DNA of 62,912 nt, counting the filler, from Salisapilia sapeloensis CBS 127946 (taxonomy: Eukaryota; Protista; Oomycota): NCBI GenBank assembly GCA_023334545.1. It is 5 parts of 5 records of this genome, joined end to end, with 100 filler letters (N's around TTAATTAATTAA, not from the genome) between each part and the next. Parts side by side here need not be neighbours in the genome. Positions count along the whole stretch, not along the records: positions 1 to 24,765 come from JAADVB010000257.1; 4 more parts are not named here. One strand, written 5' to 3'. The translations under genes were made by a program, and so were the position numbers. Shown here piece by piece: positions 955 through 19,205 of the stretch. The notes under the pieces are model-generated. The model had not been told where the DNA came from. It was given only the letters and a program-made list of their open reading frames with translations, and ran no database searches. How positions within the stretch are numbered: position 1 is the stretch's first letter; the number at the start of each line of letters is the position of its first letter.

Positions 955-3900
955 ATGTTTAGCTCTCGGAAGCCGCTGGAGGTGCCGCCGAGCAAACGGT
1001 TCGGCAGTGATGCACTCACATCCTCTTCCTATATCACTTCCAAGCGTCCGAGACTTTTGCACACTCCAACTGCCAATACGTCCGTTGAAAATGCGACGAT
1101 TGCGAGCGATGGTGCCGCCGATATTGGTGTACTGGACATGCTGCCGACTTCCTTCGCGGAGGAAGTGCGTGCTTGTGCAGTAAAGAGGATCCTCTCCTGT
1201 CGCACACATAATGATACGCATCAGAATGCAGATGTATTCTACATTGCAGTGCTACCGACGCGACTGCTCCTGTGGTCTTCTGAAGGCAAGCGCGAGACGC
1301 TGTCACTATCGCTTCCAGACCAGATTTCTCCCGTTTCAGATACGATGACGCTTTACCCGTTTGTATTCTCATTATACGGCTCTTCTCTTTCTTTGCTTCT
1401 CGTCTGCAGCTCTGGACTCGTCGCCTTGTACGATGACATTGAAGCTCCTTTCGAAAGCACGCCATTGACTGTCCAAATCCCGCTTCAGTCTCCTCATGAG
1501 CACGTCGAGACGAGTGCAGACGCCATCTTTGTCGGTCTCCAGGATTATTCACAAGCCAATGACGAAAGTCTCAAGAGTTTGCTCTGTTGGAGTGACTTTG
1601 GACAGTTGTGGGAAGTCGCGATCGAAGACCATCGTCTTCGTATCCGTACGTTCGACTGCCGGGAAGCTAGTTTGCTCTCTGGTCTGTCCAAATCTTTTTC
1701 TCGTTTCTTAGGCGGATACAACGACTCGATCGTGCCTCTTCGACAGGTACAATTGGCAACGACTGGATCGAATGCATCGACTCATGAGAGTGCCAACATG
1801 CTGCTCTTGTCTGCCGACGGATCACTCGAGCTGCGCTCCTTCAATACGGCTGACGTCATGGACCCCGAGTGTTCTCTCTGTTGGAAGTACGACGCCTTGA
1901 CGGCAGCAAAAGAGTGTTTCTTTAGCAGATTTACGTCCAGGAGGCTGCATCACACGCGTGTGCTTTCTATTGCATATGAAAATCAGGATACTGTTGGTCT
2001 TCTTGTAAGTTTCTCATGGCAGGGAGACGGCAATACGTTCAAACTGTCCTACGCACTCGTACACTGTAGTAAGCACGCGCCCAACCGTGCGTTGCAGGTT
2101 GCTAGCTTCCATCTTCTGGACTATGAAGTATCTCTATCGCACCCGGATGAAGCGAATGAACTGACTCATACACTAGTAGAGTGCTATCCAGTGACAGATG
2201 CAGGCGTCTACATCGTCTGGACATGTAGTATGCCTGTTCAAATAGCTTCTATCCGTCTCCCGTCTGCTGACACGGAGCTCGAGTCATCTTGCTTTGCTCT
2301 CCAGAGCGACATGACACGTACTCCACACGCTTTTAACTGTCAGATCACGAGCAGTCCTTTGTCTCCGAACGCTCTACGTGCATCTCTTTCCTTCATTTTG
2401 TTGGATGGAAGTGATCGTGGTCCGTCCTGCACTCTGTGCTTAGCGACTGCTTCTGCTATGCAGCAGATTGAGCGCCGAGTGCGTACGCAGACACCAAAGG
2501 TGTCTCTACCACCAGCAACTGGACAGCCAGAAGTCCAAGAGTACGTCCAGCAGCTCTCCAACGCCTTCCTCCAGTCCATGCACGGTGGACTACCTAACCT
2601 ACGCACAAAGGACAGTGAGCTTCCGATGCTTGCCGAAGCTGCTGTCTCGCTCGCGCTCCAGATCGTAGACGTAACTCCTGCGACAGGACTCCGCTGGGGC
2701 GTGCAAGAGCCGTCTGTCCAGAGCTTGATGCAAGCGACACCAAAGCTCGTTCGTTTCCAATTGGAAGAGAAGCGATCGAGGCTGAAGGAGTTTGTCGAGT
2801 TCCTCCAGCTCCAATGTCCGAGTCTATGGGGCGTCCTACAGGCGTCTTCAGACCTAAGCGATCGCCTAGCAGAAGGCAAAGAGAAGCTGGATGCAGCCGT
2901 AGCACTAAGTAAATTACAACATTCGTTATTATCTGGTGAAGAGGATGCGGTCAGTGGCCGTTTCCTCTTGCACGCGATTGAAAAGACGGTCGAGATGCGT
3001 GGACATTCTTCTCAAGAGCTCGAATTAGCTGGATACAATGCGTTTGACATTTTCTTCTCGGAAGCAAGCAACGTGGCCGATCTCTTGCCTTGTCTTATTT
3101 CAGAACTGCAGAAGATGGCAGCATCCGTTGGTAGGACCGACTTGTCGTATTTGCACGCATTGTTGGAAACAGGTCATACGATCACTAGTATGCTCCAGTC
3201 GCTGTCGTTTGCAGGAAAGGAAGCGCGAGGTCGATGGTTATTCGCGTACCTTTTGAACGACCAAGTGTTGACGGAGCAAGTGTCTCGATTAGGAGAAGTC
3301 GTCGGGTACATTCGTCATGCGTCAGACGAATTTAGACAAGTAGAGCACGGTCGAGAGGAAGTAGCGGATGCAGCGAAACAACTTGAAGCACTCGCGTCGT
3401 TGCTACTAAAGACGTACGAAAGGTACTTGATGAAGCTGCATGGAGATGATACAGTGGTGAAGCAAGAGCTCGTACGCGTCGCGCCACTAGTTTTAAATCC
3501 TCTCATCTACGTCGCGACAAGCGAAGATAAGGGATCGAGTGTATCAGCTGAAAGTGCCTTCCATCGACATGCAGAGCTCTTTGCGAGTGCGAGGAAGTTG
3601 TGTGAAGAGCATGCGTACTATGAAGGCATGGCGCACTTGGCTCAGATGGAGGATAAGGATGTGTTTGGCGAGTTGGATTACGTCTTCCCAGGCGAAAGCG
3701 GACGTCTGTCTGGCTTGAATCGACTGGAAGAGTACTGTCAGACGTACGACGGGTTCCAGCAGTTCTTGATGCAGTGGTGTGGTGGAGACATTGAACGTCC
3801 GTGGCCTGCTCCGCGATCAAAACGAGCGTCGAGTGACCATGCATTGCTAGCATACTTGCTCTCTAACTCCAAGATGGAGGCGGATGCATACGTCAAGACG

Positions 3901-4626
3901 CATGAACGACTAGGGCGGTTCGCTTGGATCACGTCCATTCGAGTGGACAAGTACGGAGAGAGTGGAAAAGCAGCGTTAGTAGAAGCTAAGGAGGAGGAAG
4001 AGGATCTAGGTAGGCGACGGACGATGGCGAGTATTGCTAAGATCGCTGCGATGGCGGCGGACGAGACGGATCAAGAGACGGAGGAGAAGGCTGCTAGAGA
4101 GTTGATTCGCACGCGTGTGCAGCAGTCGTTGCAAGACCTTCCGATCGACTTGGCGATCGACTCGGTGCCGTTGAAACCAGAATCCTTAGTAGATCGGTGT
4201 CTAGAGGCCGAGTCGATCATCCCGCTGGAAGATCCACTTCGATCAAGTGTCTTTGTCATGGCGTTAGAGGTACTCGATTCTCTCGCGAGTGAACCTTCGC
4301 GTCTGTGTAGAAATTTGCATTCGTTGCGGCTGAAAGCATGGCGTCAAGCGCTGCATACGGACCGGTCGATTTGGAAGGAAATGGTCGAAGAGTACATTTC
4401 GAGTGCGAATGAAGACAAGATCGAGGAGCTTATGCGGCAGACGTTGGTGTTTAACGCGATGAAGAGGTATGTAAAGCTGATGCCAACGAGTGTCGAGTCT
4501 GCTGCATTGACTCGCGAGATGGTCGAGACGTTGACGGACGGAGAAGCAGAGAGCGGGGAGGATGTCGTGTTTAGCCCTCGATGCCGGCAACTCGTGCTCA
4601 AGGCACTGGACCTGGCACGGAACTAA
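955..4626 (+). CDS. NUP133: Nucleoporin Nup133-like protein, 1223 aa, single exon
   Basis: Long ATG ORF with a beta-rich N-half and helical C-half. The C-terminal segment FAWITSIRVDKYGESGKAALVEAKEEEEDLGRRRTMASIAKIA resembles the Nup133 conserved block. Recognised from memory; an HMM search would confirm. Confidence 0.75.
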   Translation: MFSSRKPLEVPPSKRFGSDALTSSSYITSKRPRLLHTPTANTSVENATIASDGAADIGVLDMLPTSFAEEVRACAVKRILSCRTHNDTHQNADVFYIAVLPTRLLLWSSEGKRETLSLSLPDQISPVSDTMTLYPFVFSLYGSSLSLLLVCSSGLVALYDDIEAPFESTPLTVQIPLQSPHEHVETSADAIFVGLQDYSQANDESLKSLLCWSDFGQLWEVAIEDHRLRIRTFDCREASLLSGLSKSFSRFLGGYNDSIVPLRQVQLATTGSNASTHESANMLLLSADGSLELRSFNTADVMDPECSLCWKYDALTAAKECFFSRFTSRRLHHTRVLSIAYENQDTVGLLVSFSWQGDGNTFKLSYALVHCSKHAPNRALQVASFHLLDYEVSLSHPDEANELTHTLVECYPVTDAGVYIVWTCSMPVQIASIRLPSADTELESSCFALQSDMTRTPHAFNCQITSSPLSPNALRASLSFILLDGSDRGPSCTLCLATASAMQQIERRVRTQTPKVSLPPATGQPEVQEYVQQLSNAFLQSMHGGLPNLRTKDSELPMLAEAAVSLALQIVDVTPATGLRWGVQEPSVQSLMQATPKLVRFQLEEKRSRLKEFVEFLQLQCPSLWGVLQASSDLSDRLAEGKEKLDAAVALSKLQHSLLSGEEDAVSGRFLLHAIEKTVEMRGHSSQELELAGYNAFDIFFSEASNVADLLPCLISELQKMAASVGRTDLSYLHALLETGHTITSMLQSLSFAGKEARGRWLFAYLLNDQVLTEQVSRLGEVVGYIRHASDEFRQVEHGREEVADAAKQLEALASLLLKTYERYLMKLHGDDTVVKQELVRVAPLVLNPLIYVATSEDKGSSVSAESAFHRHAELFASARKLCEEHAYYEGMAHLAQMEDKDVFGELDYVFPGESGRLSGLNRLEEYCQTYDGFQQFLMQWCGGDIERPWPAPRSKRASSDHALLAYLLSNSKMEADAYVKTHERLGRFAWITSIRVDKYGESGKAALVEAKEEEEDLGRRRTMASIAKIAAMAADETDQETEEKAARELIRTRVQQSLQDLPIDLAIDSVPLKPESLVDRCLEAESIIPLEDPLRSSVFVMALEVLDSLASEPSRLCRNLHSLRLKAWRQALHTDRSIWKEMVEEYISSANEDKIEELMRQTLVFNAMKRYVKLMPTSVESAALTREMVETLTDGEAESGEDVVFSPRCRQLVLKALDLARN

Positions 4627-4761
4627 CGAATGGAACACGTTTTCTTTTTCTTAAGAGAGATTAAAAGTATTGAAAAAAGCGGGTTGGAAGAGGCAGGAGG
4701 GTGGGAAAATCACATGAGGTAGCCAACCTTTATCTGCACTAGTACCGGAGAAACAAGTCTA

Positions 4762-6140
4762 CTAAGCCGTCGGCAAGCGCGAGAGAGCGATGGTCATCTA
4801 TGATAGGCGATGCTTAGTACATGGCGTTCTTGGTAGAAAATGTTAAGTACGTACGACTGAAGCAGACATGATACCGACCCGCAGGTCGAGGCCAGGCATG
4901 CCCGTGAGCACCATCCAGCTACAGCGTTCACGACAGATTAGTCTTCCTATGTCCTTTCGTCGTTTATGTAAAAAGAGATAATGTACATGTCGGATCCGAA
5001 GAGCGTTAGTGTCCCAACTGCCAAGATTGCGAGCGAGACCTTGGCGAAATCGTGCTCTTTCTTGAGGAAAGCGTCGACGAATGAAGCGATGAGTGCTACG
5101 TCTGCAATGACAAAGCACGTCGTGAACCAGTACAAGTAGTCCATGGCGTCGTCACCGCATAGAACCAAAATCTCGGCAGTGCTACGCCACGCGAGAGCGA
5201 TGGCGATCCACTTGGCAGATGCTCGGTCTTCCTTTTGGACTAGAAACGCCAACAAGGCTGTGACGGGAGCGATGAATGGCATCCAGGTGTGCATTTCCGT
5301 TAGGATGTCGTCGGCGCTCACCAATTCCTTTTTCAAGTACAAGTTATGAATTGCTAGTGCTACGAGAACGACAAAGACGGCAGAAATGGAGAGGAGACGA
5401 GCATCCGTCGGTACTCTCTTCACGACTTTGCTTGTCTCCTTCTTGGCCTTATTCCACTGCTTCTGTGCGCCGGACGTTGCATTGTCTAAAGCACTCTTCG
5501 TTTCATTCGTAGTCTCCGCCGAAGCCGGGACGAGCACAGTTTGCTTCTGGGTGATCTGGACTTCACGACGGACCACTGGATCCTCTGTCGCGTCGCCACT
5601 CATCCGTCCAACGAATTCAGTGCTTTCATCTCCGACAGAGCTGTCTCTGGATTTGCTGCGTCCACGAGAAGACACACGAGACGACGTACTTTCAGACCGT
5701 TCCGACTTGCGTCCGCGAGAAGACTCGCGAGAGGTGTCCCGGCTTTTACTCGTGCTACGTGGTCGGCCACGGCCGCGACGAGCAGGACTTCTGCCACGCT
5801 CCTTGTCCGAGGAAGATGCGTAGCCATCCTCTTTTTTACGAGCTGCAAGCATCCTGCATTACAATCCATCCATGTGGTAAGTGATTAATGAGCTCACCTT
5901 TTTCGAATTTACGAATGATGTTCGAGTATCCATCGGCGATGAGATCCATGCGAGTCTCCCTACATTATGCGAAATGAGTACAAGAGCAAAGGAAGCGAAC
6001 GAAAAAAGATGGACGTACCACGTATTGCTGTCGGCACCAAAGCCCTTCCAGATGACGAGATACTGGACTCGACCACGCACGGTCTTCCGGTCCAAGATCC
6101 GCTCGATCGTGGCATTATCCTGCTGCTTTTGTTTCTCCAT
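4762..6140 (-). CDS. Chromodomain + RS-rich region + multi-pass (YhhN/TMEM86-like) membrane protein, about 379 aa
   Basis: Manual exons 6140-6019, 5959-5898, 5842-4987, 4918-4855, 4797-4762; all GT-AG introns of 55-68 nt, frame preserved. The chromodomain IERILDRKTVRGRVQYLVIWKGFGADSNTWETRMDL is split by intron 1. The last intron is optional (alternative stop at 4843). Confidence 0.75.
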
Positions 6141-6641
6141 TCGGTTTTGTCGCTTTCTTGTCTTTTCGCTTCCTTGGACAGACCACACAAATTCCCGCGC
6201 TCCGATTCAAATTAATTCTTTATCAAGTGTCTTTATTTTGACTCATATCCATTCAAATATATTTGCTTACTATAGAAGAATGTATAGAAGGGTTTTGTGA
6301 TAAAATACCGTGCTATTCTAGTATGAATTTAAATCATAAAATAATTTGTACCTTGTGTCTCACTTTATATTCATGATACGATAGTGTCTTTGGATGGAAA
6401 CGATTTAAAGTTCAAGTTGAAACGTCCATCATCCAAGTGACTTGCTGCCAAGTGGCTCTACTATCCGTATGATCTACTAGACACCTTCCTACGAGAGAAA
6501 CAAAGTATCTTGAGAAACGATAATGGACAAGAGACTGTAACCAGCAATAAGTATCTTCCCAAAAGCATAAAAGAAAATATTAAAGAGCCAAAATGCATCA
6601 AAACTTGGATCCTACGCCATGTACAGCTCCGGTCGATTCGC

Positions 6642-9600
6642 TCAGCTGACGTTGCCTCGACCGTACGTACCTTCGGGGCACTTGTACTCTTCCGGAAGCA
6701 ACGACCGCTGAAGTCCATTGAACGCATACTGTCGTTTCCCAGTGTTCTTGTACGCGTTCTCAAGTCGCACGCCGTTGCTTCGCAATGTCGATACGGTACG
6801 AACAACGTATTCCGTCGGTAAATTGTGGAACTCGGCTAGCAGCTGCACTTGTTCGAGCGTCACTGCCATGGCCGTCCGATCCTTGGCGCTCTTACAGGAC
6901 GTCGCGCGACCAGCTCCGAGCATCCGACATAAGAAACTGCCTTCTTGTATAATCTTCGGGTTTTTTGTCTTCACGACCTGCTTGCTCGCGTTCAAGATTC
7001 GCTCTTCAAGCGAAGACAGGAGCGGACGGATGGTCGCCATCGGTGTCGGGACGTGACTGTCATCCAGCTGAGCGTAGCGGTCAATGTAGCTCGCTAAGAG
7101 AGAGAAACTTTTGTGATTAATCGTGTCCTGCAGACTCGTCCGCTTGCCCTGCGCACTATTCGCCAGTGACTGCATCTCGTTAATGCCTTGTGTGAACATG
7201 ATTGGCGTGACGCTAATGCGCTGTCCGGTCTGTAGACTATGTGGGATCTTGGCCAACACCTCATCGTTGCATCTCACGCCGATCGTCACGACAAAAGATC
7301 GAGGTATTGCTCCTCGTGACAAAACGACAGATACGACGCTCGGGAGGTCATTCAGTTCCTTCAAATGCAGATTCAGCGATGGTAAGTTGGCAGGAGGTTT
7401 GGTGTCCAGTGCAAAGGATACGTTCTTCATAGCATCCACCGATGCAGCAAAGTCTTCTAACATGCCATTCTCCTTTCCTTGCGTCGACAATAAACTCTCG
7501 ACTTGGAAGAGGAAACCGATTTGATCTACAAGTGTCAAGAACTGTTCGTCCTTTGGATGCTGCAACGCGACTTCTAACTGTCGACAGAACGAAGCGACGA
7601 GTGACGTTAATGCCTGCGAGACACAAGCGTCGAGACGCTGTGTCAAGTGCCACTTGGTTTCATCGTCTGCACGCACCTCTGCCTGCGTCCAGTCAGCGTC
7701 TTCCCCACCATCTTCTCCGTCATCGTTCAACGTTTTGGACGGAGACTTTTTCGACAGCTTCGCGCGAAGACCGAGGACACCCATGCCATGTCGGAACTTG
7801 AAGCAGTGTGCAGCAAACGCACCGACAGTGATCGTTGGATACACCTTGACATTCTCCGACGTTCTCTTGGACCTTTGCGACCGGAGTTCCTGTACAGGTC
7901 CGACCCACATATCCTGGACGTGAAGATTTGTCGGTAGGAAACGGAGGACGAGACTCTTCTTCTCCGTACTCGCCTTGAAGTTCACGCTCTCCGCTTCTCG
8001 ATCATGACACGTCTGGAGACACTCGCGCAAAGCGTCGACGTACATCCGACGTTGCTGTACTCGATCTTCCAACCAGTTAAGCACGACCGCGTGGTCGTTC
8101 TCGCCCTGGATCTGATCAATCACATTGTCATAGTAGCCACTAAGCAACCCGTTCTTCATCTTATGTTCAAAGTTCGCGAGCGTCGATCGTGCGCGTGACA
8201 AGTCTTCCGATCGTTCTTTCCCCAACAGTTCAAGGTACTGTCGCGGAATTTCATTCGACAAGATGCTTTCCGTCATCTCTTCCACCACGAGATCATCTTT
8301 GGAACCGAATTGGAACGTCTTGCTCAGATGGAAACCAGCATTCTCCTTAAGTGCACGTGTGCTCACGGTCATGGCTTGGATGTGAAGCTGTGGCGGTGCA
8401 CCAGAGTCGGAAGAGCTCTCGAGCTCGTCACTCGTGTGCGTTGTGCTCAAGGACGTTGCGTTTGATCGATGCGAACCTTGACGTGCGATCAAGTGCATCT
8501 CATTCGACGATGCGAGGTCGATCGCGGCGCAAGTGAATTCGCAAAAGACACGTGGACGACGTTGTGGGTGGAGTCCCATGCCCGAGACTCTCGACGTGGT
8601 TGCTCGTTCGCTCAGATGCACGGACGACGTCCGGATTCGAGTTCTAGACTCTTCTTCCTCGTCCTCCGGGATCTCATACACGACGAAGCGTAGTGCCGGG
8701 TTGTTCACGAGCAAAGGGACGTGCAAGACACTAAGGAAGGTGGCTAGTTGCGTCGAGTTGTCTGCATTCAACGTCGGAAGAACCGTCTCGGTCGACCCAA
8801 CACGCACCCAGTGGCTACCTGCAGGCGCACTCATGCTAATGGATGTCGACGTACGTCGTCGTAGCATCGAGATCTCATTCTGCAGTCCTGTCTGGATGAC
8901 GTTCGAGACGCTAGCTCTCGTATGCGGGTCCTCCATCATGTCTTCAGCAGCCAAGTCCACGTCAGACGGCAGCTCTGCCACGAACAGCTCGACACAACAC
9001 GCTTGCGTCAACGGTTGCTGCGTCGCCAATTGCACCGACAGCGCCAGGACGTTCTGATTCGTCGTGTCTGCCATGGCATTCGCACCTGCGTTGTATTCGA
9101 CATCGGGGAAGCGAGTGATGCCTGCCCAATCGTCGCTTAAAGTGTCCTGTGAGTATGGCATCGTGACCTTATCTCCCGTCTCTTCATCCTTCCCGCCGAT
9201 GCGACTTTGCATCGTGTCGCGAGAGTTCAATCCTGACAGACGTGGATTCCACTGCAAGAGGAGGAAACCTGCGGACGGTAGCATGATCGGGAGCCAGACT
9301 GTGAAGGTGTACCACACTACTGCATGGACAGACCATTCCTGCGTGTACAAGACGACGTCAATAATGCACGAGATACCAAAGGTAACGGCGACAACAACAA
9401 TGACCACGAGGTACGTCACGAGCGACTTTTTCATGACACGAACGATACGTGCGTCGAGGATATCACCTGACTGCATCACGAGCTTTCGACCTCGTTGGAG
9501 CACGAGACTACCTAAGGCCAACAGCACGAGTGCCATGACAAAGATAAGCACTTGGGCTCCGAGTGTCGATGGTTCATGCCACGAAGAGTACGGGACGTTA

Positions 9601-12559
9601 TGACACACTTTCTGTCGAGCATATAGCCACTGCGTCGGTTGGAGGTCAGGACAGTAGTCAGATCCGCACATCTTGAGGTCGTAGAGAGGGTTACGTAGGT
9701 AGTCGTTGTACGTGCACTTGATAAAGTCTGTCATGCTGATCAACGCCACGAGTTCATAAGCGTAGAAGATGCCGTTGACGACTACGAAGAGTAGAAGGAG
9801 GTAGAGACGACGGATCGTACGTGTGTCGTGGTTCAAGACAGTGGACCAGTGGAAGCAGACGGACGTGACCATCGTCCACATGCAGCAGTAGGTGATGATA
9901 CGAAGCATATAGTAGACGTGTCCAGTCGTTTGTCCTTGGGACGAAGCGTTGATCCAAATCGCATTCGCAAAGATCTGCAAAACGAAGACGAGGATGATCC
10001 AGACGGACGTCACGTCACTGTAGAACGTCGGGCCGGAGAAGGATATACCGTTCATACGAGTGACCAAGATCGCAACGACAAGTCCAAGGGAAAACATCGT
10101 GATGGACATGACGCTATAGACACTTAATCCATAGTCCGAGTACGTCTGCTTTTGGACAAACACAGGTCCACAGTCTGCTCCTTGGACGTCATCCCCACTA
10201 AGCAATATCACTTTAGCTAATTGCGGCAACGACTTAGTGGATTCGTTCCCGCCTCCCCCAGACCATATCGCTCCTTGCACTTGAATTTCAAACGTGAACT
10301 CGTTATGGAGCTCCCACGTTGCATCCAGGTTGGCACCTGTCGGAAGCAAGTCTGTGATACAAAAGTACGAGTCATTCACTCGCTTCGCATTTAAATTCGT
10401 TTCGCCTGGAGAGCTGTACATGTCAATGAATGGATTGCCGACCTTGTCGTACGAAGCTTTGGCGTATCGAAAGTCGACTTGACCTGTAACAGGTCGACCT
10501 TTGGCGCCACAAGAGCTCGAAGCGAGGTCGACGCAGACTCGAGGATTCTTCGATGTCGGACCGACGATCGTGGATGTCGTGAAGGATAACGACAGAACGT
10601 TGGTGTCTTCTTGCATCCACATGAGGGACGAGTGGAGACTATCTGACTGCGGCTCTGGCAGGTCCATCGACACGAGCTTGACTTGTCCCATGACAGAAGA
10701 CGTGCCCGTCGTAGACGTATCTGCTGCGACTGCTAGTTCCGTCAGACGTCTCTTCTTCTCCACGACGCCCTTCACGCGTTCGTAGACGAGCAAAATATCC
10801 AAGTGGTTGTCTCCAGAAATGCCGGATCCAGACACGAGACTCTGCAAGAGATCAAACGACAAGGACGTCGTGTCATTGGACTTGAAGTACGTCTCCCAAT
10901 CATTGAAAAGCTCCATGATATCGACGAACCCAACGCGCGAGTTGCTTTCCGAGTCGATTGGACAATCCTCTTCCGGCATGACGTCTCTGCATGGATTGAT
11001 CTTGTAGTCCGTGCTGTCCCTCTCTCCCTTGGTGATGCGTAGAGCTGTTTCGCTCCAACTAACGAACCGCCAGCCTTTTGGAATCTGCATTGCGAACCAC
11101 CACTTTTTCCCAGTGAGTACTGGACTATCCTTGATGTTGTACAAGGCACCAGCAACGTCCGATGCGAGTAAAGAGAACGTCATGTTGCTCACGCTACTCG
11201 GCGTTGATGGAATGACATTTACTTTGTAGCTGTTTGTCGATACGCACGTCTCGTAGGCAATAGGACAATCGCCATTGTCGAGCATCTTGACGCAAAGAGG
11301 CTTCTCCGTGGAAGAACCGAGGAACTTGTACTGACACTCGTTGCTCTTGCATCGACAGTACTGAGACGTGTACATCGGGTAGTTCCGCACGATCATCGGT
11401 TTCGACCCGTCGCCAGTGTCAGCCGACGCTGTTTCTTCGCTCATGGTGTTCACATTTACCAGCGCTTCATCACTCACAGAAGTCGCATTCTGAAGCGCCT
11501 CCAAAAATTCTTCAAGCTCCAGACAAGCAGCAGACGAAGAGCCGTCGTTGCACTCTTCCTCTAAGAGAGCGATCGTCTCGTTGTCCGCGAGGCTCACGTT
11601 GGCTAACGAGATACCTAAAGAGCCTGCAGTTACATCGTCTATATGGGAAGCTCCTACATCGCTCGTGTTATGCGAATCTGACGACGCGTCGTCATGCACC
11701 ACCACTTCTCCAGGATGACTGCTGCTTGTCGCGCCATCTGTACTACTGGCATTAGCAGAAGCACTTTCGTGATTCGAGCCTGGAGACGTAGAGATATAGT
11801 CTTCTGCTGAGGACGGGGAGGTGTTCTCTTCTGATGCTGATGAGTCATGTCCATAGTCATGGGCTTCAAAGGAACTCGCGGGAGGATTTGTTGGGTGAGT
11901 AATATGGTGAGACTCCTCCGGCACAGGTGTCGGTGTCGGCGTTGGCGTTGGCGTTGGTGTCTTTGTCGGCGACGGTGTCTCCGTGGGAGGCGTGTTTACC
12001 GGCCTTGGTACTAGTGGTATATGCCCAGCATGTGGGTTGAACAAGTTCAGGAAGTCGTCTTCGATGAAACCATCGTCACTTGCCGATTCTTCCGCTGATA
12101 AGTCGGACGAGTCCGAATCCGAGTCATCTGGACGAGTGGCGGCTGGAGTAAAAGCAGGGTAGGCTGCAGTACTTACGTCTTCAATCTCATGCTGTACAAC
12201 TAGAATGGAATGAATATAAGGTGGTAGAGAAGTGGATGCGTGTGTACGTACGAGACGTCGATGTATGCGTGGCGGATGATGCCCCGTTGATGACTGCGTG
12301 TGCGAAGCTTTCAACGGCTTTGGACGGGATAGATCAGTCTTAAAATTCGAATGCAAAAGTCCCGATGTAGCATACCTGTATCTATCGGTGTTTTCTCTGC
12401 TGGTGCATATGCGACCGTTAAGACGGTCATGAGCAAGAATAATGGACGCTCAAGAGGAGGTCGTCGCGGCTTCTTTCGCTGCAATAATGTTCTATGAGTT
12501 TCCCACTATCAATGTATCAAGGGAAGATAGTATACCCGCGTCGCCATCGCTTGTACCAT
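6642..12559 (-). CDS. 7TM receptor fused to an inositol polyphosphate 4-phosphatase (GPCR-INPP bigram) with a large ectodomain, about 1916 aa
   Basis: Exons 12559-12536, 12478-12376, 12317-12252, 12199-6642. Hydrophobic leader (PLFLLMTVLTVAYA), seven hydrophobic helices at about 10140-9250, and the INPP4 catalytic motif CKSAKDRT at 6896-6873. The ORF-track start at 12356 is a TTG inside an intron. Confidence 0.85.
11926..11961 (-). repeat. Imperfect hexamer repeat encoding (PT)n in the mucin-like stalk
   Basis: ggtgtc/ggcgtt units translate to TPTPTPTPTPTP on the minus strand. Confidence 0.8.
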
Positions 12560-12736: not shown

Positions 12737-14507
12737 ATGGCCATGGCCGAGCATGGCAGCGATGGCGATAGCGATGGCGAGCAGACGCAGCAGCAACCGA
12801 CACAGAAGAGACTAGGACACAAGAGGAAGCATGAGAAAGATACCGGCGGAAAAGTCAAGCACGTTGGCAAGTATCTACGGAATGCACCGATCTCAGAAAA
12901 GCGTATCAAGGTATGACGATTCGTGTCCATTGCCATGTCAATACATTCGAATGACTTACAATTGATGATTGTCATGTAGCATATTCGAGATAAGAAGCTT
13001 AAAGGCACATTGGAAACGGCGTATGAAGAGCATCGAGAAGCAGCGGAAGCTGCTGCCAAGGCCGAGGTCCTCAATCCGGAGCAAGCTGGGTACCTCGAGG
13101 CGGAAGGCATGGAAAAGACGTATAAATTCAGGCAAAACCAGCTCGCACAGAACGTCGATGTGAACACGGCGAACAAAATCTTTAGTCTCGACTTGCCGGA
13201 GTTTGGCAGCTACTTTGCCAAGTACACTCGCAACGGTCGAAACCTCTTGCTCGGTGGTGAAAAAGGTCACTTAGCGGTCCTTGACTCACTCCGTATGCGT
13301 GTGACGTGTGAATTCCACGCGAATGACCTCGTTCGCGATGTCACGTTTCTACATAATAACACCATGTTCGCTGCGGCGCAGAAGAAGTATGTGTACATTT
13401 ACGACGGCACTGGCGCCGAAGCGCACTGCCTTCGGTCGATCCCAGAGCCTCAGGCCATGCAGTTCTTGCCGTACCACTTTTTATTGTCCACCATCAGTGG
13501 CAACGGTTTCCTGAGCTACCACGACGTGACCACCGGTCAAGAGGTCGCTGCGCATCGTACTAAGCAAGGGTTCTGCAACACGATGGCACAGAACCCTTGG
13601 AATGCTGTGATCAACCTCGGTCATGCCAGTGGTCTCGTCTCTTTGTGGACGCCCAACATGTCCGACGCTGTCGTGAAGATGCAATGTCACAAAGGACCAA
13701 GTACGACTACTTACTCATCTATCCTATACTCGCTTCTAACTCTTGTGCCTAGTTCGCTCCATGGGTGTGGATACCAGTGGCAAGTACCTTGTCACGGCCG
13801 GTGCGGATCGCCAGGTCAAAGTCTTTGACTTGCGCAAGTATCAAGAAGTAAGTCACTACTACTTGAGCGCAGCTGCGAACACCATGTCTGTGAGTCAGCG
13901 AGGACTTGTCGGTCTCGGCTTTGGTCCGAACGTTCATGTCGTGAAGAACCTCTTGTCTACGACGTCTCCGCAGTTGTACATGACGCATAAACTTCCAGGC
14001 TCTAAGGTCTCATCCGTGACGTTCCAACCGTTCGAAGATGTCTTGACCGTCGGACACGCCACGGGACTAAGCAACCTCGTGATCCCAGGCTCTGGTGAAC
14101 CGAACTTTGACACGTACGAGGCGAATCCGTATGAGAACGCCAAGCAGCGTGGAGAATCCGAAGTCCATGCGTTGCTCGAGAAACTCCGACCGGAGATGAT
14201 TTCGCTCGACCCGACCAAGATCGGCCAAGTGGACACAGATGCAACGGACGAACGTCAGTCCAAGATCGAGATGATGGAGCAAGCGAACGGTGTGCCGACG
14301 AAGCGTAAGAACAAGATGCGTGGTCGGAACAAGGTGAGCAATCGTCTTCGGAAGAAACAGAAGAACGTTGTCGACATTCAGAAAGAAAAGTTCAAGGAGA
14401 AACAGGAGCAGGAAAAGAAGAGTCGAGAGATGAAGAAACGACAGGAAGAGTGGCAGGACAAGGCCGAGTCGGCGCCAACGTCTTTGAATCGCTTTTTTAA
14501 ACACTAG
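12737..14507 (+). CDS. WDR46: WD40 ribosome biogenesis factor WDR46/Utp7 (BING4CT domain), about 549 aa
   Basis: Exons 12737-12910, 12980-13700, 13753-14507. Motifs YTRNGRNLLLGGEKGH, FLPYHFLL and PGSGEPNFDTYEANPYE (BING4CT). Confidence 0.92.
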
Positions 14508-14538: not shown

Positions 14539-16764
14539 TTACGCCAAGTAGTTGTATGTGTTCTGTTGCTCTTCATCTCGTTCCAAGTACTCGCGATCGA
14601 TCAGAGCTTCGATACGACGTTTAATCACCTTGACATCCGGTCGGAAGAAATGGAGTTGACTCAGCACTTCCGACACGAGTTGCTGATGCGACAAGGTCTT
14701 CCGCGCTTTCATAATGCGTACGATGGCAGCTTCAATCGCCAGACTCCGGTCTTCTTCCACGTGTTTCTGACTATGACTCTCTTCCAACGCAGCCATCGGG
14801 ATACGCAGTCGACGCATCGGAGACGTAAAGCTCGTGTTCACACTGAACGCGTCGGTTTTGGGCGCAATCTTCTTGCCGGGTGGGTCCTTGCTCAAGACCT
14901 TGAATTTGCCACACGACAGCGAGTGTAGGATGCGCGTCACGACTTCCGTCTCCAAGTGCAGAGCTTCGCATACTTGTTGGAAGGATAGCGGCGTGGAGGC
15001 ATCATTGAACAAGAGGAGAGCAACAGCCTGGAGTGTCGTGACCACGAGGTCGTAGCTCTTTTTCCCGAAGCGAGCACGGACGGAGCAGTTGCCTAGTGAG
15101 TACACCCACTGCAGTCGACGGTGACTCGTGGTCGAGTCGTAGTAGACCTTGAAGAGGTTCATGCATCGGACCATATTCGGTGGCATGGTGACTTCCAATG
15201 CAGGGTACGTGGGCCAATAGCCTGTGGTGAGCACTTGGACGTTGAACTCGAGGCTCGGGACGTCCCCTTCCGTCGCTCGCTGGCGTTTCAAGAAGGCTTC
15301 AAACTCCTGCTGATGGTCCGTCCCGACCGCCAAGTCGTTCATCATACCTTCCATCTTGCCAGTGAACTGTGCGCCGCATCTTAGCTTTAGCTTTCCGATC
15401 ATCAAGCTCTCGGCATCTTTCGACGCAGAACGTTGGTTGAGCAATCGCTTGGCGAGTTGATTGCGATAGATCTCTGCGAAAAGATCTTTATCGGTCAAGT
15501 AGGAGAAGACAAAGACGACTTTTTCCAAGTACTCTTCGACTTGTTCGTCACTAAGTTTCTCTCCACCAGTCTTGAGGATCCGATCGCAGAACGTCGACAT
15601 GAGTTTCGCGGACGAGTCTTTCCCAACGTCTTTATTGACAAACTCTTCAAAAGCATCCTTGAGAGCTTTTTGGAATAGCGGAGTAGCACCAAATTGATCA
15701 TTGACAATCCCTCGGAAACGATCGTGGATCGACAAAATGTCTTTGATAAATGTCGGATCGGCACTTGCGTCCTTGATACTCCCACTTTCAAGTGCCCTAC
15801 ATCGTTTTTCGACAATATCATTCCCGACGCTCGTGATGTACTTTTGAACCAACGCTGCGATCGGTTGTAGACCGTCCTTCAGGTCCTTGTACAGTCGGAA
15901 CATGCGTGATAAGTCGTCTAGCTTTTCGTTTTTGAGTAAAGCAATGACACCCGAGTTCTCTCGCTCGATCAATTCACTCTGAGGGTTCTTCAAAAGCACT
16001 TGTTCAATCGCGCTAATCAACTTTGGTTCCGTCGAGGAATGCAAGTACCGAGCGACGCGACTACGTTCACTCTGGAGCGCTTGTTCCACCTTCTCCAAGT
16101 ACACAGGCGTCGGGTCTTCACTCAGCCATAGCTTGGACTTTTCAGCGTAATACCGTTCGCTACGTTCGATTAAGTCTACTTCCAACTTTTGCTCGTAGAC
16201 ATGGAGCGAGTTCATGCCCATGACTTCAAAGATCTCGACACAGTGGCGTAGGAGGTCCGTGTCGATGATATCCCCGTCACGTTCCAAGTCAACGAGGTCG
16301 AGCATACGCTCTTGCATCCGGACGTGGAGACTGTCAAAGACGCGTTCACGAAAGGCATGCAGGCCGACTTCCTGTAGACTCTTGACTTGATGGTGCTTGA
16401 CGTAGTATCTGTCCAAGTACATGAAAAAGCGGCTCATCCATTTATTCATGAGCTTATGGTTCTGCCATCTCGACACGACATGATCGAGGAATTGATCATC
16501 CGAGGTCTGCGCAAGCGCCGGTCGAACGGTCGATCCGAGGTAGTCATCAAAGGTCTGACCATGGCGTTCATACAGCTGCTCAGAGAAGTTATACGGCGAT
16601 CGTTGTGTACTCATATTGTAGCAAATCGTATAGATCTCCATGAATGCTTTGGGTGGAAACGGAGACGCCGTTAGTTTATCAACGCCATCTTCGAGAATAC
16701 CCAAGAGAACGTCAATGGCTTTGGGCTTAATCTCTTCATCCCATCCAGCTTCTAAAGTGATCAT
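14539..16764 (-). CDS. CUL1: Cullin-1, 741 aa
   Basis: YTICYNMSTQR, FMYLDRYYV, cullin homology region and the neddylation-domain motif IEAAIVRIMKARK...IEALIDREYLERD. First ATG is at 16764. Confidence 0.93.
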   Translation of the reverse strand: MITLEAGWDEEIKPKAIDVLLGILEDGVDKLTASPFPPKAFMEIYTICYNMSTQRSPYNFSEQLYERHGQTFDDYLGSTVRPALAQTSDDQFLDHVVSRWQNHKLMNKWMSRFFMYLDRYYVKHHQVKSLQEVGLHAFRERVFDSLHVRMQERMLDLVDLERDGDIIDTDLLRHCVEIFEVMGMNSLHVYEQKLEVDLIERSERYYAEKSKLWLSEDPTPVYLEKVEQALQSERSRVARYLHSSTEPKLISAIEQVLLKNPQSELIERENSGVIALLKNEKLDDLSRMFRLYKDLKDGLQPIAALVQKYITSVGNDIVEKRCRALESGSIKDASADPTFIKDILSIHDRFRGIVNDQFGATPLFQKALKDAFEEFVNKDVGKDSSAKLMSTFCDRILKTGGEKLSDEQVEEYLEKVVFVFSYLTDKDLFAEIYRNQLAKRLLNQRSASKDAESLMIGKLKLRCGAQFTGKMEGMMNDLAVGTDHQQEFEAFLKRQRATEGDVPSLEFNVQVLTTGYWPTYPALEVTMPPNMVRCMNLFKVYYDSTTSHRRLQWVYSLGNCSVRARFGKKSYDLVVTTLQAVALLLFNDASTPLSFQQVCEALHLETEVVTRILHSLSCGKFKVLSKDPPGKKIAPKTDAFSVNTSFTSPMRRLRIPMAALEESHSQKHVEEDRSLAIEAAIVRIMKARKTLSHQQLVSEVLSQLHFFRPDVKVIKRRIEALIDREYLERDEEQQNTYNYLA

Positions 16765-16985
16765 AGTAACGATGGAAGTGATCGATCGAAGCGTCTCGGT
16801 GTAATCCCCAGTCGATCTTCTTTGGCCCGCTGATCGTCTTCTCACGAGCTACCAATGTCCTACTATCGAACAACTTTCTTTCTCTTTTGTATTTTGTATA
16901 CTGTCTCGGAATAGATGCGACTAAACCTTTGGCAGGAATCAGACGCGAGACTACACTTCCAGTAGACGTACTTGTGACGGCCGGA

Positions 16986-18170
16986 ATGGAGGCGTTGCCG
17001 GCAGAGCAGCGACACGAGACACTTCCATCCCATACGTCTGCTCATATGCAGGAAATGGACGGATCGCCTCCGATATGGGGGCCCTTTACGACGTCCTTTA
17101 CGGTCGGTCGAAGTCGACGATGTGACCTGATGATCCCGACGAATGCGGCCACGCGGACCGTGAGCAAGCACCACATTCGCGTCTATCCCACGTTGGATCC
17201 ACTAGGTGATCCGAACGTCCAGAAGTGGATGGTCCGGGACTTGAACGGTATGAATGGGACTGCCGTGAATGACATTACGCTCGAGCCAGGGGAGTCTGCT
17301 TCTGTCCGAGACCAAGACCGCGTCGTCCTCGCGTCTGTACAACGCCATGGCGTCCAGCTCGAGTTCCATATCCCAGAAAGTGACGGACACGAGATATTTG
17401 TGAGTGTCTGTCCGGAACGACAAGCTCCTCATGCCTCGGACGGTCTCTTGCCGCCCATGGCGCCGAATCCGACTTCGTACGTACATGTGCAGGACGAAGA
17501 GCTTGTTGTTGATAACCAGGAGGAAGAACTACAAACGATGGAGACACCTACGCGGAAACGGAATCGAAGTGAAAAGGAACAATTGGCGCAATTCCACGCC
17601 AGCAATGAAAAGGACGAGCTAGAAGGCTTCATGACGTGTCCCGTATGCCTCGAGTTCTATCAGTCGAGTGCCACGCTCGCTTGCTCCCATACGTTTTGTA
17701 GTTACTGTCTCAACCAGTGGTTTCGTTCCTCTCTTAGCTGTCCTGAATGCCGAACGCTCGTCGATCGACTGCCTGTGCGCAATCGAGCACTCGACGACCT
17801 CGTCGCGAGACTCGTCGGACACACGGATGCGTACCAGAAACTCCAGCAGAGTCGCACACAACGCTTACCGCCACTCACGTCGCTCGTGTCTAGTTCCTGG
17901 CCGTACAATCGCCAGCGTCTGAACGTGTTCAGAGCTTGGAATAGCTCGGATCAGCAGGCATTTGCGTCCTTAGTACGGACGCTTATCGGCGAGCAACGCG
18001 TCGCGGTCTTGCGACACGTTGGCTTGACGATGGAGACAATTGCCCATTCGAGTCAAAAGTACAGGACTTTGGCCGCAACCAACTTGCTTTTGGAGGCAGG
18101 GGACGCCCCGCGAGGAAGCTTGGCGTACGACAGCGCGGAGCGTTTGCGTCTGTATGTGCATTTTGGTTGA
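16986..18170 (+). CDS. FHA + C3HC4 RING E3 ligase (RNF8/CHFR-like), about 394 aa
   Basis: FHA motifs GRS...VSKHH...DLNGMNGTAVN; RING CPVC...CSHTFCSYC...CPEC. First in-frame ATG is at 16986. Confidence 0.85.
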   Translation: MEALPAEQRHETLPSHTSAHMQEMDGSPPIWGPFTTSFTVGRSRRCDLMIPTNAATRTVSKHHIRVYPTLDPLGDPNVQKWMVRDLNGMNGTAVNDITLEPGESASVRDQDRVVLASVQRHGVQLEFHIPESDGHEIFVSVCPERQAPHASDGLLPPMAPNPTSYVHVQDEELVVDNQEEELQTMETPTRKRNRSEKEQLAQFHASNEKDELEGFMTCPVCLEFYQSSATLACSHTFCSYCLNQWFRSSLSCPECRTLVDRLPVRNRALDDLVARLVGHTDAYQKLQQSRTQRLPPLTSLVSSSWPYNRQRLNVFRAWNSSDQQAFASLVRTLIGEQRVAVLRHVGLTMETIAHSSQKYRTLAATNLLLEAGDAPRGSLAYDSAERLRLYVHFG

Positions 18171-18228
18171 AGTGGGATGTTGTTAGAAGGTTGCGCTCGA
18201 GATGCCAGTTGGCTTTGGACGAGACGAG

Positions 18229-18915: not shown

Positions 18916-19205
18916 CGAATGCATCCAGTCTTTTTCCATTCCCAAAATAAACAAATCCGATTCCATCTCTCTTCTACATACCTTCCTATTCATTTTATTT
19001 GATACTAGAGCTAGTAGAAACCAACCTCCTAGGTGATTACATCGACAGTATATCAGACCGCGTCATGGTGGTACGTGTGTCTTGTTGTGAAAACGGACGG
19101 ATGTGTAAGAGCGAATAGCACTTCAAGGAGCCTTCAAGGCCTCTTCGTGCGACCATTCAATCCCAGAAGACGACGAATCGAGTCATTTCGTCAAAAGATC
19201 TCGCG

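What the first reader, a model, noticed from the sequence alone, without database searches (positions are those of the whole stretch)
4762..6140. Hidden chromodomain-RS-transmembrane protein with lamin-B-receptor-like architecture
Seen: splicing joins a chromodomain (split across two small exons and missed by the ORF track) to an Arg/Ser-rich tract (RGRSPARRGRGRPRSTSKSRDTSRESSRGRKS...RGRSKSR), a VRREVQI segment and several TM helices. The TM part resembles YhhN/TMEM86 lysoplasmalogenase, but the conserved GD and AH positions appear as AE and AD. Established: animal LBR is a chromatin-reader (Tudor) domain + RS domain + enzyme-derived membrane domain that tethers heterochromatin to the inner nuclear membrane. 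Inference: this may be a convergently assembled oomycete heterochromatin-to-envelope tether built on a dead lipid-enzyme scaffold. It lies tail-to-tail with Nup133.
Basis: partly seen in the sequence, partly recalled or inferred. Interest (0 to 1): 0.78.

Follow-up and report, generated by a model that had tools for sequence, protein, structure and literature searches.

The report
Membrane-anchored chromodomain protein of oomycetes
The window holds a real five-exon gene that joins an HP1-type chromatin-reading domain and a basic Arg/Ser-rich linker to a six-helix membrane domain; oomycetes conserve this uncharacterised protein, and it is a plausible but untested tether between chromatin and the nuclear envelope.

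Summary
On the minus strand, five exons (6140-6019, 5959-5898, 5842-4987, 4918-4855, 4797-4762) give a 379-codon reading frame. All four introns are 55-68 nt and GT-AG. Exon 1 alone passes Pfam's Chromo threshold. Exon 3 carries an Arg/Ser-rich tract with an AT-hook-like motif (RRGRGRPRS) and five membrane helices. Exons 4-5 add the sixth helix.

An exhaustive search found a small family. Every member with a known source is an oomycete: Phytophthora, Peronospora, Bremia, Plasmopara, Pythium, Globisporangium, Lagenidium, Albugo. Independent gene models show the same chromodomain-RS-membrane layout. Three intron positions were read base by base in one relative. One contig carries the gene as a single uninterrupted reading frame. 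The flanking genes, including the Nup133-like gene, are syntenic.

The lamin-B-receptor analogy is reasonable as a way of working but untested. Two caveats apply:
- The chromodomain is closest to HP1/CBX but lacks the first of the three aromatic cage residues in every member.
- The YhhN/TMEM86 resemblance rests on weak signals only: sub-threshold Pfam hits, hhalign probability 46% (no better than the best permuted control), and Foldseek TM-score 0.45.

"Dead enzyme" is therefore not established. No publication on the family was found. I class it as a new variant of a known kind.

The parts
6019..6140 (-). Exon 1: start codon (6140) and the three beta-strands of the chromodomain. It ends two bases into the Trp codon of the NTW motif.
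   Evidence: Pfam Chromo 31.2 bits, cut-off 25.1. Sequence and frame checked. Same intron position in L001.
5960..6018 (-). Intron 1, 59 nt, GTACGT...TAG.
   Evidence: An intron at the same codon position in L001. A gap of about 78 nt between the exon 1 and exon 2 matches in L096; no gap in L095.
5898..5959 (-). Exon 2: completes the Trp codon and encodes the C-terminal helix of the chromodomain (ETRMDLIADGYSNIIRKFEK).
   Evidence: 58-70% identical to the matching stretch in L001, L095 and L096. This part is a helix in the AlphaFold model of the orthologue P0011 (residues 46-62).
5843..5897 (-). Intron 2, 55 nt, GTGAGC...CAG.
   Evidence: Only the acceptor at 5843 keeps the frame. Same intron position in L001.
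4987..5842 (-). Exon 3: disordered basic linker followed by membrane helices 1-5.
   Evidence: Translation. Relatives found at E down to 1.6e-23.
5637..5798 (-). Arg/Ser-rich tract within exon 3 (residues 15-68 of the exon 3 translation).
   Evidence: The 133-residue linker has 20 Arg, 26 Ser and 10 RS/SR dipeptides. The same composition is seen in all 28 orthologues checked. The region is predicted disordered in the orthologue (pLDDT below 50).
5754..5780 (-). AT-hook-like motif RRGRGRPRS.
   Evidence: A GRP core flanked by Arg. Related SPGRP[RK]GR motifs occur in 11 of 29 family sequences.
5601..5621 (-). Conserved linker motif TEFVGRM (family consensus TQFVSRL). It is followed by diverged counterparts of the LLRSTLxAL and KKxVxLxYEE motifs.
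   Evidence: Family alignment of the linker.
4989..5420 (-). Membrane domain, helices 1-5. It holds the family-invariant Trp, Ala, Trp-Arg, Glu (in WRxxAE) and Asp (in GSD).
   Evidence: Alignment A2. AlphaFold model of the orthologous domain: pLDDT 79.6, pTM 0.73, six long helices plus one short one.
4919..4986 (-). Intron 3, 68 nt, GTACAT...TAG, placed right after the conserved Ser/Ala-Asp.
   Evidence: Same codon position and phase in L001. Several database gene models read through this intron.
4855..4918 (-). Exon 4: loop and first part of membrane helix 6 (WMVLTGMPGLDLRVGIMSASV).
   Evidence: Matches SWVISTENSELESRVILMSMAV in orthologues. tblastn match in L095.
4798..4854 (-). Intron 4, 57 nt, GTACGT...TAG.
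   Evidence: In L001 an intron also ends just before the codons for Met-Thr-Ile.
4762..4797 (-). Exon 5: end of helix 6 (MTIALSRLPTA) and stop codon TAG at 4764-4762.
   Evidence: Matches LTIALSPMPT / MTISLS in orthologues.

Best explanation
The gene encodes a roughly 379-residue integral membrane protein. It is the fast-evolving orthologue of a conserved, uncharacterised oomycete family.

Shown by the data:
- An N-terminal HP1/CBX-type chromodomain.
- A disordered basic linker of about 130-240 residues, rich in RS dipeptides and S/T-P-x-K/R sites. In the window it carries an AT-hook-like RGRGRPR motif, and it keeps three short conserved motifs.
- A C-terminal six-helix membrane domain with invariant Arg, Glu and Asp residues inside the helices.

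Inferred:
- The basic N-terminal part and the basic loop between helices 2 and 3 put the chromodomain on the cytoplasmic/nucleoplasmic face.
- The protein is inserted in the ER and diffuses through the pore membrane. Its extralumenal part is only about 25 kDa. A basic patch followed by a long disordered linker resembles the sorting signal that yeast Heh2 uses to reach the inner nuclear membrane.
- It is then retained at the inner nuclear membrane because the chromodomain binds a histone tail and the basic linker binds DNA. This would hold chromatin against the envelope, as the lamin B receptor and C. elegans CEC-4 do in animals.
- Phosphorylation of the RS and SP sites would tune the binding.
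- The conserved polar residues suggest the membrane domain does more than anchor, for example oligomerisation or lipid binding.
For: Fused architecture:
- Gene model.
- Full-length orthologues in at least 8 oomycete genera.
- Intron positions shared with L001 and gaps consistent with introns 1-2 in L096.
- One uninterrupted ORF in L095.

Chromodomain:
- Pfam Chromo above threshold on exon 1.
- Nearest solved structures are CBX5, CBX1, CBX3, CDYL, SUV39H1, MPP8 and Polycomb CBX, all methyl-lysine readers, at E down to 1.8e-9.
- The canonical fold of three strands plus a helix is modelled at pLDDT 78-91.
- The Trp and Phe/Tyr cage residues and the NTWE motif are kept.

Linker:
- Predicted disordered.
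- RS-rich in all members, with AT-hook-like motifs in 11 of 29.

Membrane domain:
- Confident six-helix model.
- Charge distribution in the loops fits an N-terminus-inside topology (sequences).

Precedents:
- CEC-4 is a chromodomain protein of the inner nuclear membrane that anchors H3K9-methylated chromatin. LBR binds chromatin through its Tudor domain (PMC4783997).
- A nuclear localisation signal plus a disordered linker gives active import to the inner nuclear membrane (PMC4695851, PMC4569319). Diffusion-retention is described in PMC4460150.
Against: - There are no localisation, binding or expression data for any member, and no paper was found.
- The first of the three aromatic cage residues (Tyr20 in human CBX5, from my own knowledge of that structure) is Ala, Thr, Asp or Pro in every family member where the position could be read, and Ala in the window. 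The classical cage needs three aromatics (PMC4660199), so methyl-lysine reading may be weak or altered.
- Chromodomains can bind non-histone Arg-rich peptides at membranes, as in cpSRP43.
- Invariant intramembrane Arg, Glu and Asp hint at a function that a plain anchor would not need.
- Synteny with Nup133 is conserved, but gene order in oomycetes is broadly conserved, so this says little about function.
- The window's membrane domain lies on a very long branch.
Confidence: 0.45

Rival explanations
1. The chromodomain is not a histone reader. With only two cage aromatics, it is a peptide-binding module for a non-histone partner, as the cpSRP43 chromodomains are for Arg-rich tails. On this reading the protein works in the ER or another endomembrane, for example as an adaptor or receptor, and the RS linker is a phospho-regulated interaction region.
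For: The first cage aromatic is absent in the whole family. cpSRP43 shows that chromodomains can read Arg-rich non-histone motifs with a modified cage (PMC4660199). The family's own linker is Arg-rich and keeps three conserved short motifs that could be ligands in cis or in trans.
Against: The closest sequence relatives are all nuclear HP1, CBX, CDY, SUV39 and MPP8 readers. The NTWE motif and the Trp/Phe cage positions are strictly kept. The AT-hook-like and SPxR motifs point to DNA or chromatin. CHD1 reads H3K4me3 with two aromatics (my own knowledge).
Confidence: 0.2
2. The membrane domain is the business end. It would be a diverged but active YhhN/TMEM86-type lipid hydrolase, or another intramembrane enzyme or transporter. 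The chromodomain and linker would only place or regulate that activity at chromatin-facing membrane, so this is nuclear-envelope lipid metabolism rather than tethering.
For: - YhhN is the most frequent Pfam family among sub-threshold hits: 17 of 30 members, best E 2.8e-5.
- hhalign against a diverse 17-sequence YhhN profile gives probability 46% and E 2e-4 over 97 columns. GD aligns to AE and (A/S)H aligns to AN or AD.
- A YhhN HMM scores the family at a median of 9.3 bits, against 3.2 bits for reversed decoys.
- A Tupanvirus lysoplasmalogenase is Foldseek rank 12 in BFVD with TM-score 0.45.
- Arg, Glu and Asp inside the helices are invariant, and the acidic residue of GD is kept as Glu.
Against: - No hit reaches Pfam's cut-off, and the window's exon 3 gives no YhhN hit at E up to 1.
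- MerC (16 of 30 members) and MFS_1 (E 3.3e-5) score similarly.
- Helix-order-permuted controls reach 48% hhalign probability.
- The reverse search, family HMM against YhhN sequences, is at decoy level except for one sequence.
- NCBIfam gives no lysoplasmalogenase hit.
- The domain has six helices, whereas I infer about eight for YhhN from the alignment and from memory. The His of the (A/S)H motif is lost.
- The Foldseek match has E 0.89.
Confidence: 0.15
3. The fusion is an artefact. On this reading the chromodomain exons and the RS-membrane ORF are separate genes, or the small exons are chance ORFs.
For: No transcript data are available for this genome. The ORF 4947-5852 has its own ATG.
Against: The intron positions and phases I could read are shared with L001. 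In L095 the exon 1-4 matches lie within one continuous 427-aa ORF. More than 25 independent annotations give the fused protein. The ATG at 5852 lies inside intron 2, and the frame continues through the acceptor at 5843.
Confidence: 0.02

Closest known systems
Lamin B receptor (LBR), animals
   Same: The order of parts is the same: an N-terminal methyl-lysine-reader-type domain, an Arg/Ser-rich basic region, then a multi-pass membrane domain. The proposed job is also the same: holding chromatin at the inner nuclear membrane (PMC4783997).
   Different: The membrane part has six helices and no ERG4/ERG24 sterol-reductase signature. There is no sequence relationship. Localisation and binding are untested.
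CEC-4, C. elegans
   Same: It is a chromodomain protein resident at the inner nuclear membrane that binds methylated H3K9 directly and anchors heterochromatin (PMC4783997, PMC9988841).
   Different: I recall no predicted membrane helices in CEC-4 (own knowledge). This family has six. CEC-4 mutagenesis targeted cage tyrosines (own knowledge), whereas this family has only two cage aromatics. The two lineages are unrelated.
HP1/CBX-class chromodomains (CBX5, CBX1, CBX3, CDYL, SUV39H1, MPP8)
   Same: These are the best sequence matches, E 1.8e-9 to 1e-5. The fold is the same. The Trp and Phe cage residues and the NTWE motif are conserved.
   Different: The first cage aromatic is missing. The domain starts 3-10 residues from the N-terminus. 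There is no chromo-shadow domain. The domain is fused to a membrane domain.
YhhN/TMEM86 lysoplasmalogenase family (Pfam PF07947)
   Same: There is weak collinear similarity of helices 2-4(5) with YhhN helices 2-4(5). It appears as sub-threshold Pfam hits, hhalign probability 46% and Foldseek TM-score 0.45.
   Different: All signals are below every significance threshold and within the range of the controls. The domain has six helices against about eight. GD becomes AE, and (A/S)H becomes AN or AD.
Heh2/Src1-type inner-nuclear-membrane sorting signal (yeast) and Pom121
   Same: A basic patch followed by a long intrinsically disordered linker lies ahead of the first membrane helix (PMC4695851, PMC4569319).
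   Different: No importin-binding signal was tested. The resemblance is one of layout only.

Membership tests
Chromodomain (Pfam PF00385), HP1/CBX class | Profile match above the curated threshold | tested here: met
   Exon 1 alone scores 31.2 bits against a cut-off of 25.1. PF00385 is precomputed for nearly all orthologues.
Chromodomain (Pfam PF00385), HP1/CBX class | Fold of three antiparallel strands packed against a C-terminal helix | tested here: met
   AlphaFold model of the orthologue P0011: strands 5-14, 17-25 and 33-38, helix 46-62, pLDDT 78-91. The window's spliced protein was not folded.
Chromodomain (Pfam PF00385), HP1/CBX class | Cage of three aromatic residues for methyl-lysine | tested here: not met
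   Trp and Phe/Tyr are kept. The position aligned to the first cage Tyr of CBX5 is Ala in the window and Ala, Thr, Asp or Pro in every member where it could be read.
Chromodomain (Pfam PF00385), HP1/CBX class | Binding to a methylated histone tail | not testable with these tools
   Needs peptide pull-down or ITC.
Lamin B receptor | N-terminal Tudor domain | tested here: not met
   Pfam finds Chromo and no Tudor domain.
Lamin B receptor | Arg/Ser-rich region after the reader domain | tested here: met
   10 RS/SR dipeptides in the window's linker and 9-23 in orthologues.
Lamin B receptor | Sterol C14-reductase (ERG4/ERG24) membrane domain | tested here: not met
   No such Pfam hit at E up to 1 for the window or E up to 10 for the family. 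The domain has only six helices.
Lamin B receptor | Residence in the inner nuclear membrane | not testable with these tools
   Needs microscopy of a tagged protein.
YhhN/TMEM86 (PF07947) | Profile match above the curated threshold | tested here: not met
   The window's exon 3 gives no hit at E up to 1. The first member P0003 scores 20.0 bits against a cut-off of 25.6. The best family E-value is 2.8e-5, and 17 of 30 members hit at E up to 10. NCBIfam gives none.
YhhN/TMEM86 (PF07947) | Profile-profile or structural similarity beyond controls | tested here: inconclusive
   hhalign probability is 46%. Reversed controls give below 1%, but helix-permuted controls give a median of 5% and a maximum of 48%. 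The YhhN HMM scores the family at 9.3 bits against 3.2 bits for decoys. The BFVD lysoplasmalogenase match has TM-score 0.45 and E 0.89. No YhhN structure was found in the PDB by sequence.
YhhN/TMEM86 (PF07947) | Conserved GD and (A/S)H motifs in adjacent helices | tested here: not met
   In the best alignment GD pairs with AE, and (A/S)H pairs with AN in the family and AD in the window.
AT-hook | Gly-Arg-Pro core flanked by basic residues | tested here: met
   RRGRGRPRS in the window. SPGRP[RK]GR-type motifs occur in 11 of 29 family sequences, so the motif is not universal in the family. DNA binding was not tested.

The most novel reading that the evidence does not exclude
Oomycetes have independently built an LBR-like tether. 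A histone-tail reader (a chromodomain with a two-aromatic cage) and a phospho-regulated DNA-binding linker are fused directly to a multi-pass inner-nuclear-membrane domain that descends from a YhhN-type lipid enzyme. To my knowledge this would be the first chromodomain wired straight into a membrane, and the first direct chromatin-to-envelope anchor outside animals and fungi. It would position the H3K9me3/H3K27me3-marked, repeat-rich compartments where effector genes lie.
Probability: 0.3. Interest if true: 0.8.

Novelty: new variant of a known kind. Interest (0 to 1): 0.62.

Why it matters
How chromatin is held at the nuclear envelope is understood in animals (LBR, lamins, CEC-4, PRR14) and yeasts, but hardly at all in stramenopiles.

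A conserved protein that joins a chromatin reader directly to a membrane domain gives a concrete, testable candidate. One gene can be tagged, deleted and assayed.

It also bears on two wider questions. The first is whether the layout of reader, RS region and enzyme-like membrane domain is a recurrent evolutionary solution. The second is whether nuclear position contributes to the epigenetic switching of genes in the repeat-rich compartments of oomycete genomes.

If the function turns out to be different, the family is still an unusual use of a chromodomain outside soluble nuclear proteins.

Tried and rejected
Searches that led nowhere:
- The word-indexed protein search with exon 3 found nothing. 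The exhaustive search was needed.
- Exact look-ups of two window ORFs were not on record, so the source species stays unidentified. The family tree puts the window on a long branch next to an unnamed Logan contig.
- Sequence and profile searches of the PDB with the membrane part were empty.
- Foldseek against the PDB gave a best E of 0.31, to FAT domains and class C GPCRs.
- Foldseek against BFVD gave nothing significant.
- NCBIfam gave nothing relevant.

Attempts to build a YhhN profile:
- A narrow enterobacterial YhhN profile gave hhalign probability 0.3%.
- The genome-contig scan returned almost only Enterobacterales-type sequences.
- Diversity was obtained instead from plasmid records.

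Ideas considered and rejected:
- Separate genes or chance exons. Rejected on shared intron positions and the uninterrupted ORF in L095.
- Membership of the LBR family. Rejected because there is no Tudor domain and no sterol reductase domain.
- A retrotransposon (chromovirus integrase) origin of the chromodomain. No reverse transcriptase or integrase ORF adjoins it, synteny is conserved, and the nearest relatives are HP1/CBX.
- Nup133 adjacency as functional evidence. The order is conserved, but the whole three-gene block is, so it carries little weight.

Literature searches for the family or its accession numbers found nothing.
Full report
**1. What is in the sequence**

Reading 4500-6500 on the minus strand and checking frames by script gives a five-exon gene.

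| Feature | Coordinates | Length |
|---|---|---|
| Exon 1 | 6140-6019 | 122 nt |
| Intron 1 | 6018-5960 | 59 nt |
| Exon 2 | 5959-5898 | 62 nt |
| Intron 2 | 5897-5843 | 55 nt |
| Exon 3 | 5842-4987 | 856 nt |
| Intron 3 | 4986-4919 | 68 nt |
| Exon 4 | 4918-4855 | 64 nt |
| Intron 4 | 4854-4798 | 57 nt |
| Exon 5 | 4797-4762 | 36 nt, stop TAG at 4764-4762 |

- All introns are GT..AG.
- The exons sum to 1140 nt, which is 379 codons plus the stop.
- The mechanical ORF list shows only the 301-aa ORF 4947-5852 and a 109-aa read-through ORF over exon 1. That is why the chromodomain was "hidden".

**2. The pieces, searched exon by exon**

- Exon 1 alone (40 aa) passes Pfam's Chromo threshold: 31.2 bits against 25.1.
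- Exon 3 starts with an Arg/Ser-rich tract that includes RRGRGRPRS. It continues through a TEFVGRM...VRREVQI stretch and ends in five hydrophobic helices.
- Exons 4 and 5 encode a loop and a sixth helix.
- Exon 3 gives no YhhN hit in Pfam at E up to 1.
Natural full-length orthologues stood in for the whole protein.

**3. Relatives**

- The word-indexed search found nothing.
- An exhaustive HMMER search of 1.84 billion representatives with the linker and membrane part found 15 proteins, best E 1.6e-23.
- Five of these are full-length annotated proteins with an N-terminal chromodomain, an RS tract and the membrane domain. They come from Peronospora belbahrii, Lagenidium giganteum, Pythium oligandrum, Albugo laibachii and Pythium insidiosum.
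- A profile search added Phytophthora (many species), Bremia, Plasmopara, Peronosclerospora, Globisporangium, Nothophytophthora and Albugo candida.
- Every member with a known source is an oomycete. Sources name the proteins only "Chromo domain-containing protein" or "hypothetical protein", and in two cases "Heterochromatin-associated protein". The only precomputed Pfam domain is Chromo.
- No saprolegnian was listed. The searches were not designed to prove absence.

**4. Support for the gene model from other genomes**

- Locus L001 is a Logan contig of an unnamed relative. I read introns 1-3 there base by base and they sit at the same codon positions: after the second base of the Trp codon of NTW, after the first base of the codon that follows the chromodomain helix, and after the second base of the codon following the conserved Ala/Ser-Asp. 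Intron 4 ends just before Met-Thr-Ile, as in the window.
- In P. oligandrum (L096), tblastn places the matches to exons 1, 2 and 3 in order, separated by gaps of about 80-90 nt. This is consistent with introns 1 and 2.
- In L095, a Plasmopara-like Logan contig, the matches to exons 1-4 follow one another within a single uninterrupted 427-aa ORF. It is either an assembled transcript or an intron-less copy. Either way the fused protein is real.
- The flanking genes are syntenic. The same-strand upstream 1904-aa ORF is 61-67% identical to its counterparts. The tail-to-tail Nup133-like gene is 35% identical.

**5. The chromodomain**

- The nearest solved structures are the methyl-lysine-reading chromodomains of CBX5, CBX1, CBX3, CDYL, SUV39H1, MPP8 and Polycomb CBX proteins, at E 1.8e-9 and weaker.
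- The AlphaFold model of P. oligandrum P0011 gives the canonical three strands plus a helix at pLDDT 78-91.
- Of the three cage aromatics of the classical domain (PMC4660199), the Trp and the Phe/Tyr of the WKGF motif are conserved, and so is NTWE.
- The position two residues before the I/V-E-R/K-I/V strand is Tyr20 in human CBX5 (my own knowledge of that structure). Here it is Ala in the window and Ala, Thr, Asp or Pro in every member where I could read it.
- The domain also begins only 3-10 residues from the N-terminus.
- This is therefore an HP1-class chromodomain with a two-aromatic cage. Methyl-lysine reading is possible, since CHD1 manages with two (own knowledge), but it cannot be assumed.

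**6. The linker**

- The linker is 133 residues in the window and 164-239 in orthologues.
- It is predicted disordered, with pLDDT below 50. The exception is one low-confidence helix over the LLR(S/A)TLxAL motif.
- All members are rich in Arg and Ser, with 9-23 RS/SR dipeptides and 1-9 S/T-P-x-K/R sites.
- 11 of 29 sequences, including the window, carry an AT-hook-like GRP core flanked by basic residues.
- Three short motifs are conserved: TQFVSRL, LLRSTLxAL and KKxVxLxYEE. The window keeps recognisable but diverged versions.

**7. The membrane domain**

- A 30-sequence alignment (A2) shows six invariant columns. They include Trp-Arg and Glu in helix 3 (WRxAAE) and Asp at the end of helix 5 (SD). 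There are also many nearly invariant positions.
- AlphaFold gives six long helices plus a short one, with pLDDT 79.6 and pTM 0.73.
- Loop charges fit an N-terminus on the cytoplasmic/nucleoplasmic side: a basic pre-helix-1 segment, a basic loop 2-3, and acidic loops 1-2 and 3-4. This is an inference.
- The window's copy sits on a very long branch of 2.18 substitutions per site. It has lost the nearly invariant His before helix 3 but keeps all invariant residues. Its chromodomain remains 58-74% identical to relatives.

**8. Is the membrane domain YhhN/TMEM86-like?**

Evidence for:
- YhhN is the most frequent Pfam family among sub-threshold hits: 17 of 30 members, best E 2.8e-5. The first member P0003 scores 20.0 bits against a cut-off of 25.6.
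- I built a diverse 17-sequence YhhN alignment from E. coli and plasmid-borne lysoplasmalogenase genes. hhalign against it gives probability 46% and E 2e-4 over 97 columns.
- In that alignment, GD pairs with AE, and (A/S)H pairs with AN in the family and AD in the window.
- A YhhN HMM scores the family at a median of 9.3 bits, against 3.2 bits for reversed decoys.
- In BFVD, a Tupanvirus lysoplasmalogenase is rank 12, with one of the highest TM-scores in the list at 0.45.

Evidence against:
- Nothing reaches a significance threshold.
- MerC and MFS_1 give similar Pfam numbers.
- Helix-order-permuted controls reach 48% probability.
- The reverse HMM search is at decoy level apart from one sequence.
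- A narrow YhhN profile gave probability 0.3%, and NCBIfam gave nothing.
- The PDB holds no YhhN structure by sequence, so the empty PDB Foldseek result says nothing about YhhN either way.

I put remote homology at about even odds. "Dead enzyme" is not shown: the acidic residue is kept as Glu, and invariant charged residues persist inside the membrane.

**9. How it most likely works**

The layout is a chromatin-type reader, a basic disordered DNA-binding-type linker, and a multi-pass membrane domain, with the N-terminus on the nucleoplasmic side.

Three things fit a protein that reaches the inner nuclear membrane by diffusion or import and is retained there by binding chromatin:
- The extralumenal part is small, about 25 kDa.
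- A basic patch lies ahead of a long disordered linker.
- The layout resembles known sorting and retention mechanisms (PMC4460150, PMC4695851, PMC4569319).

Such a protein would tether chromatin to the envelope as LBR and CEC-4 do (PMC4783997). Localisation, ligand and phenotype are all inferred. I give this reading 0.45.

The rivals are:
- A non-histone ligand for the two-aromatic chromodomain (0.2).
- An active lipid enzyme or transporter positioned at chromatin (0.15).
- A gene-model artefact (0.02).

**10. Comparison and novelty**

- It is not a member of the LBR family: no Tudor domain and no sterol reductase.
- It is not a demonstrable member of YhhN.
- It is a member of the chromodomain superfamily with one defining feature, the three-aromatic cage, not met.
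- I know of no other chromodomain fused to a multi-pass membrane domain.
- Four literature searches found no paper on the family or its accession numbers.
- The kind of system, a membrane-resident chromatin reader or tether, is known. This is a new architectural variant, restricted as far as seen to oomycetes.

**11. Limits**

- The source species was not identified.
- The window's joined protein was not searched or folded.
- No AlphaFold DB library was available for the decisive fold comparison with TMEM86.

Noticed in passing
window 6642-12356 (-): A 1904-aa ORF lies directly upstream on the same strand. It has no Pfam hit, but its last 586 residues match the inositol-polyphosphate-4-phosphatase-like domain of P-Rex1/2 in the PDB at E 3e-12. 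They contain a CKSAKDRT (CX5R) motif. A hydrophobic multi-helix region lies in the middle of the protein, so it looks like a membrane-bound 4-phosphatase-like protein. It is a conserved neighbour in P. oligandrum and in L095, at 61-67% identity.
   Followed up: partly
window 955-4626 (+): A 1223-aa single-exon ORF lies tail-to-tail with the finding, with 135 nt between the two stop codons. Pfam finds nothing, but phmmer matches human Nup133 structures at E 2.9e-6 over residues 553-752. The arrangement is conserved in L001 and L096.
   Followed up: partly
L095 (Logan SRR11364883), 1665-2948: The orthologue is one uninterrupted 427-aa ORF, with the exon 1-4 matches following one another without gaps. 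It lies 290 nt downstream of the 3' end of the upstream neighbour. It is either a read-through transcript assembly or a lineage that lost the introns.
   Followed up: partly
window 4989-5420 (-) compared with relatives: The window's membrane domain is only 25-40% identical to all relatives and sits on a branch of 2.18 substitutions per site. The neighbouring gene, in contrast, is 67% identical to the Plasmopara-like contig, and the chromodomain is 58-74% identical. Evolution of the membrane part is therefore markedly accelerated in this lineage.
   Followed up: partly
window 13010-14507 (+): A WD40 + BING4CT (UTP7-like) gene is split over two overlapping ORFs in different frames (13010-13828 and 13743-14507), which suggests a short intron.
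   Followed up: no
window 14539-23666: Ordinary eukaryotic genes in a compact arrangement: cullin (14539-16845, -), an FHA + RING protein (16887-18170, +), a fatty-acid desaturase (19206-20396, +), a 399-aa ORF with no Pfam hit (20839-22038, +) and a trypsin-like protease (22668-23666, -).
   Followed up: no
database gene models P0001, P0002, P0004, P0006-P0008, P0010, P0037, P0038, P0041, P0043: Many public or automatic gene models of this family are truncated or read through the intron after the conserved Ser/Ala-Asp, giving tails such as ...LADRY.... Others lack the chromodomain exons. The family's architecture is therefore under-reported in databases.
   Followed up: partly
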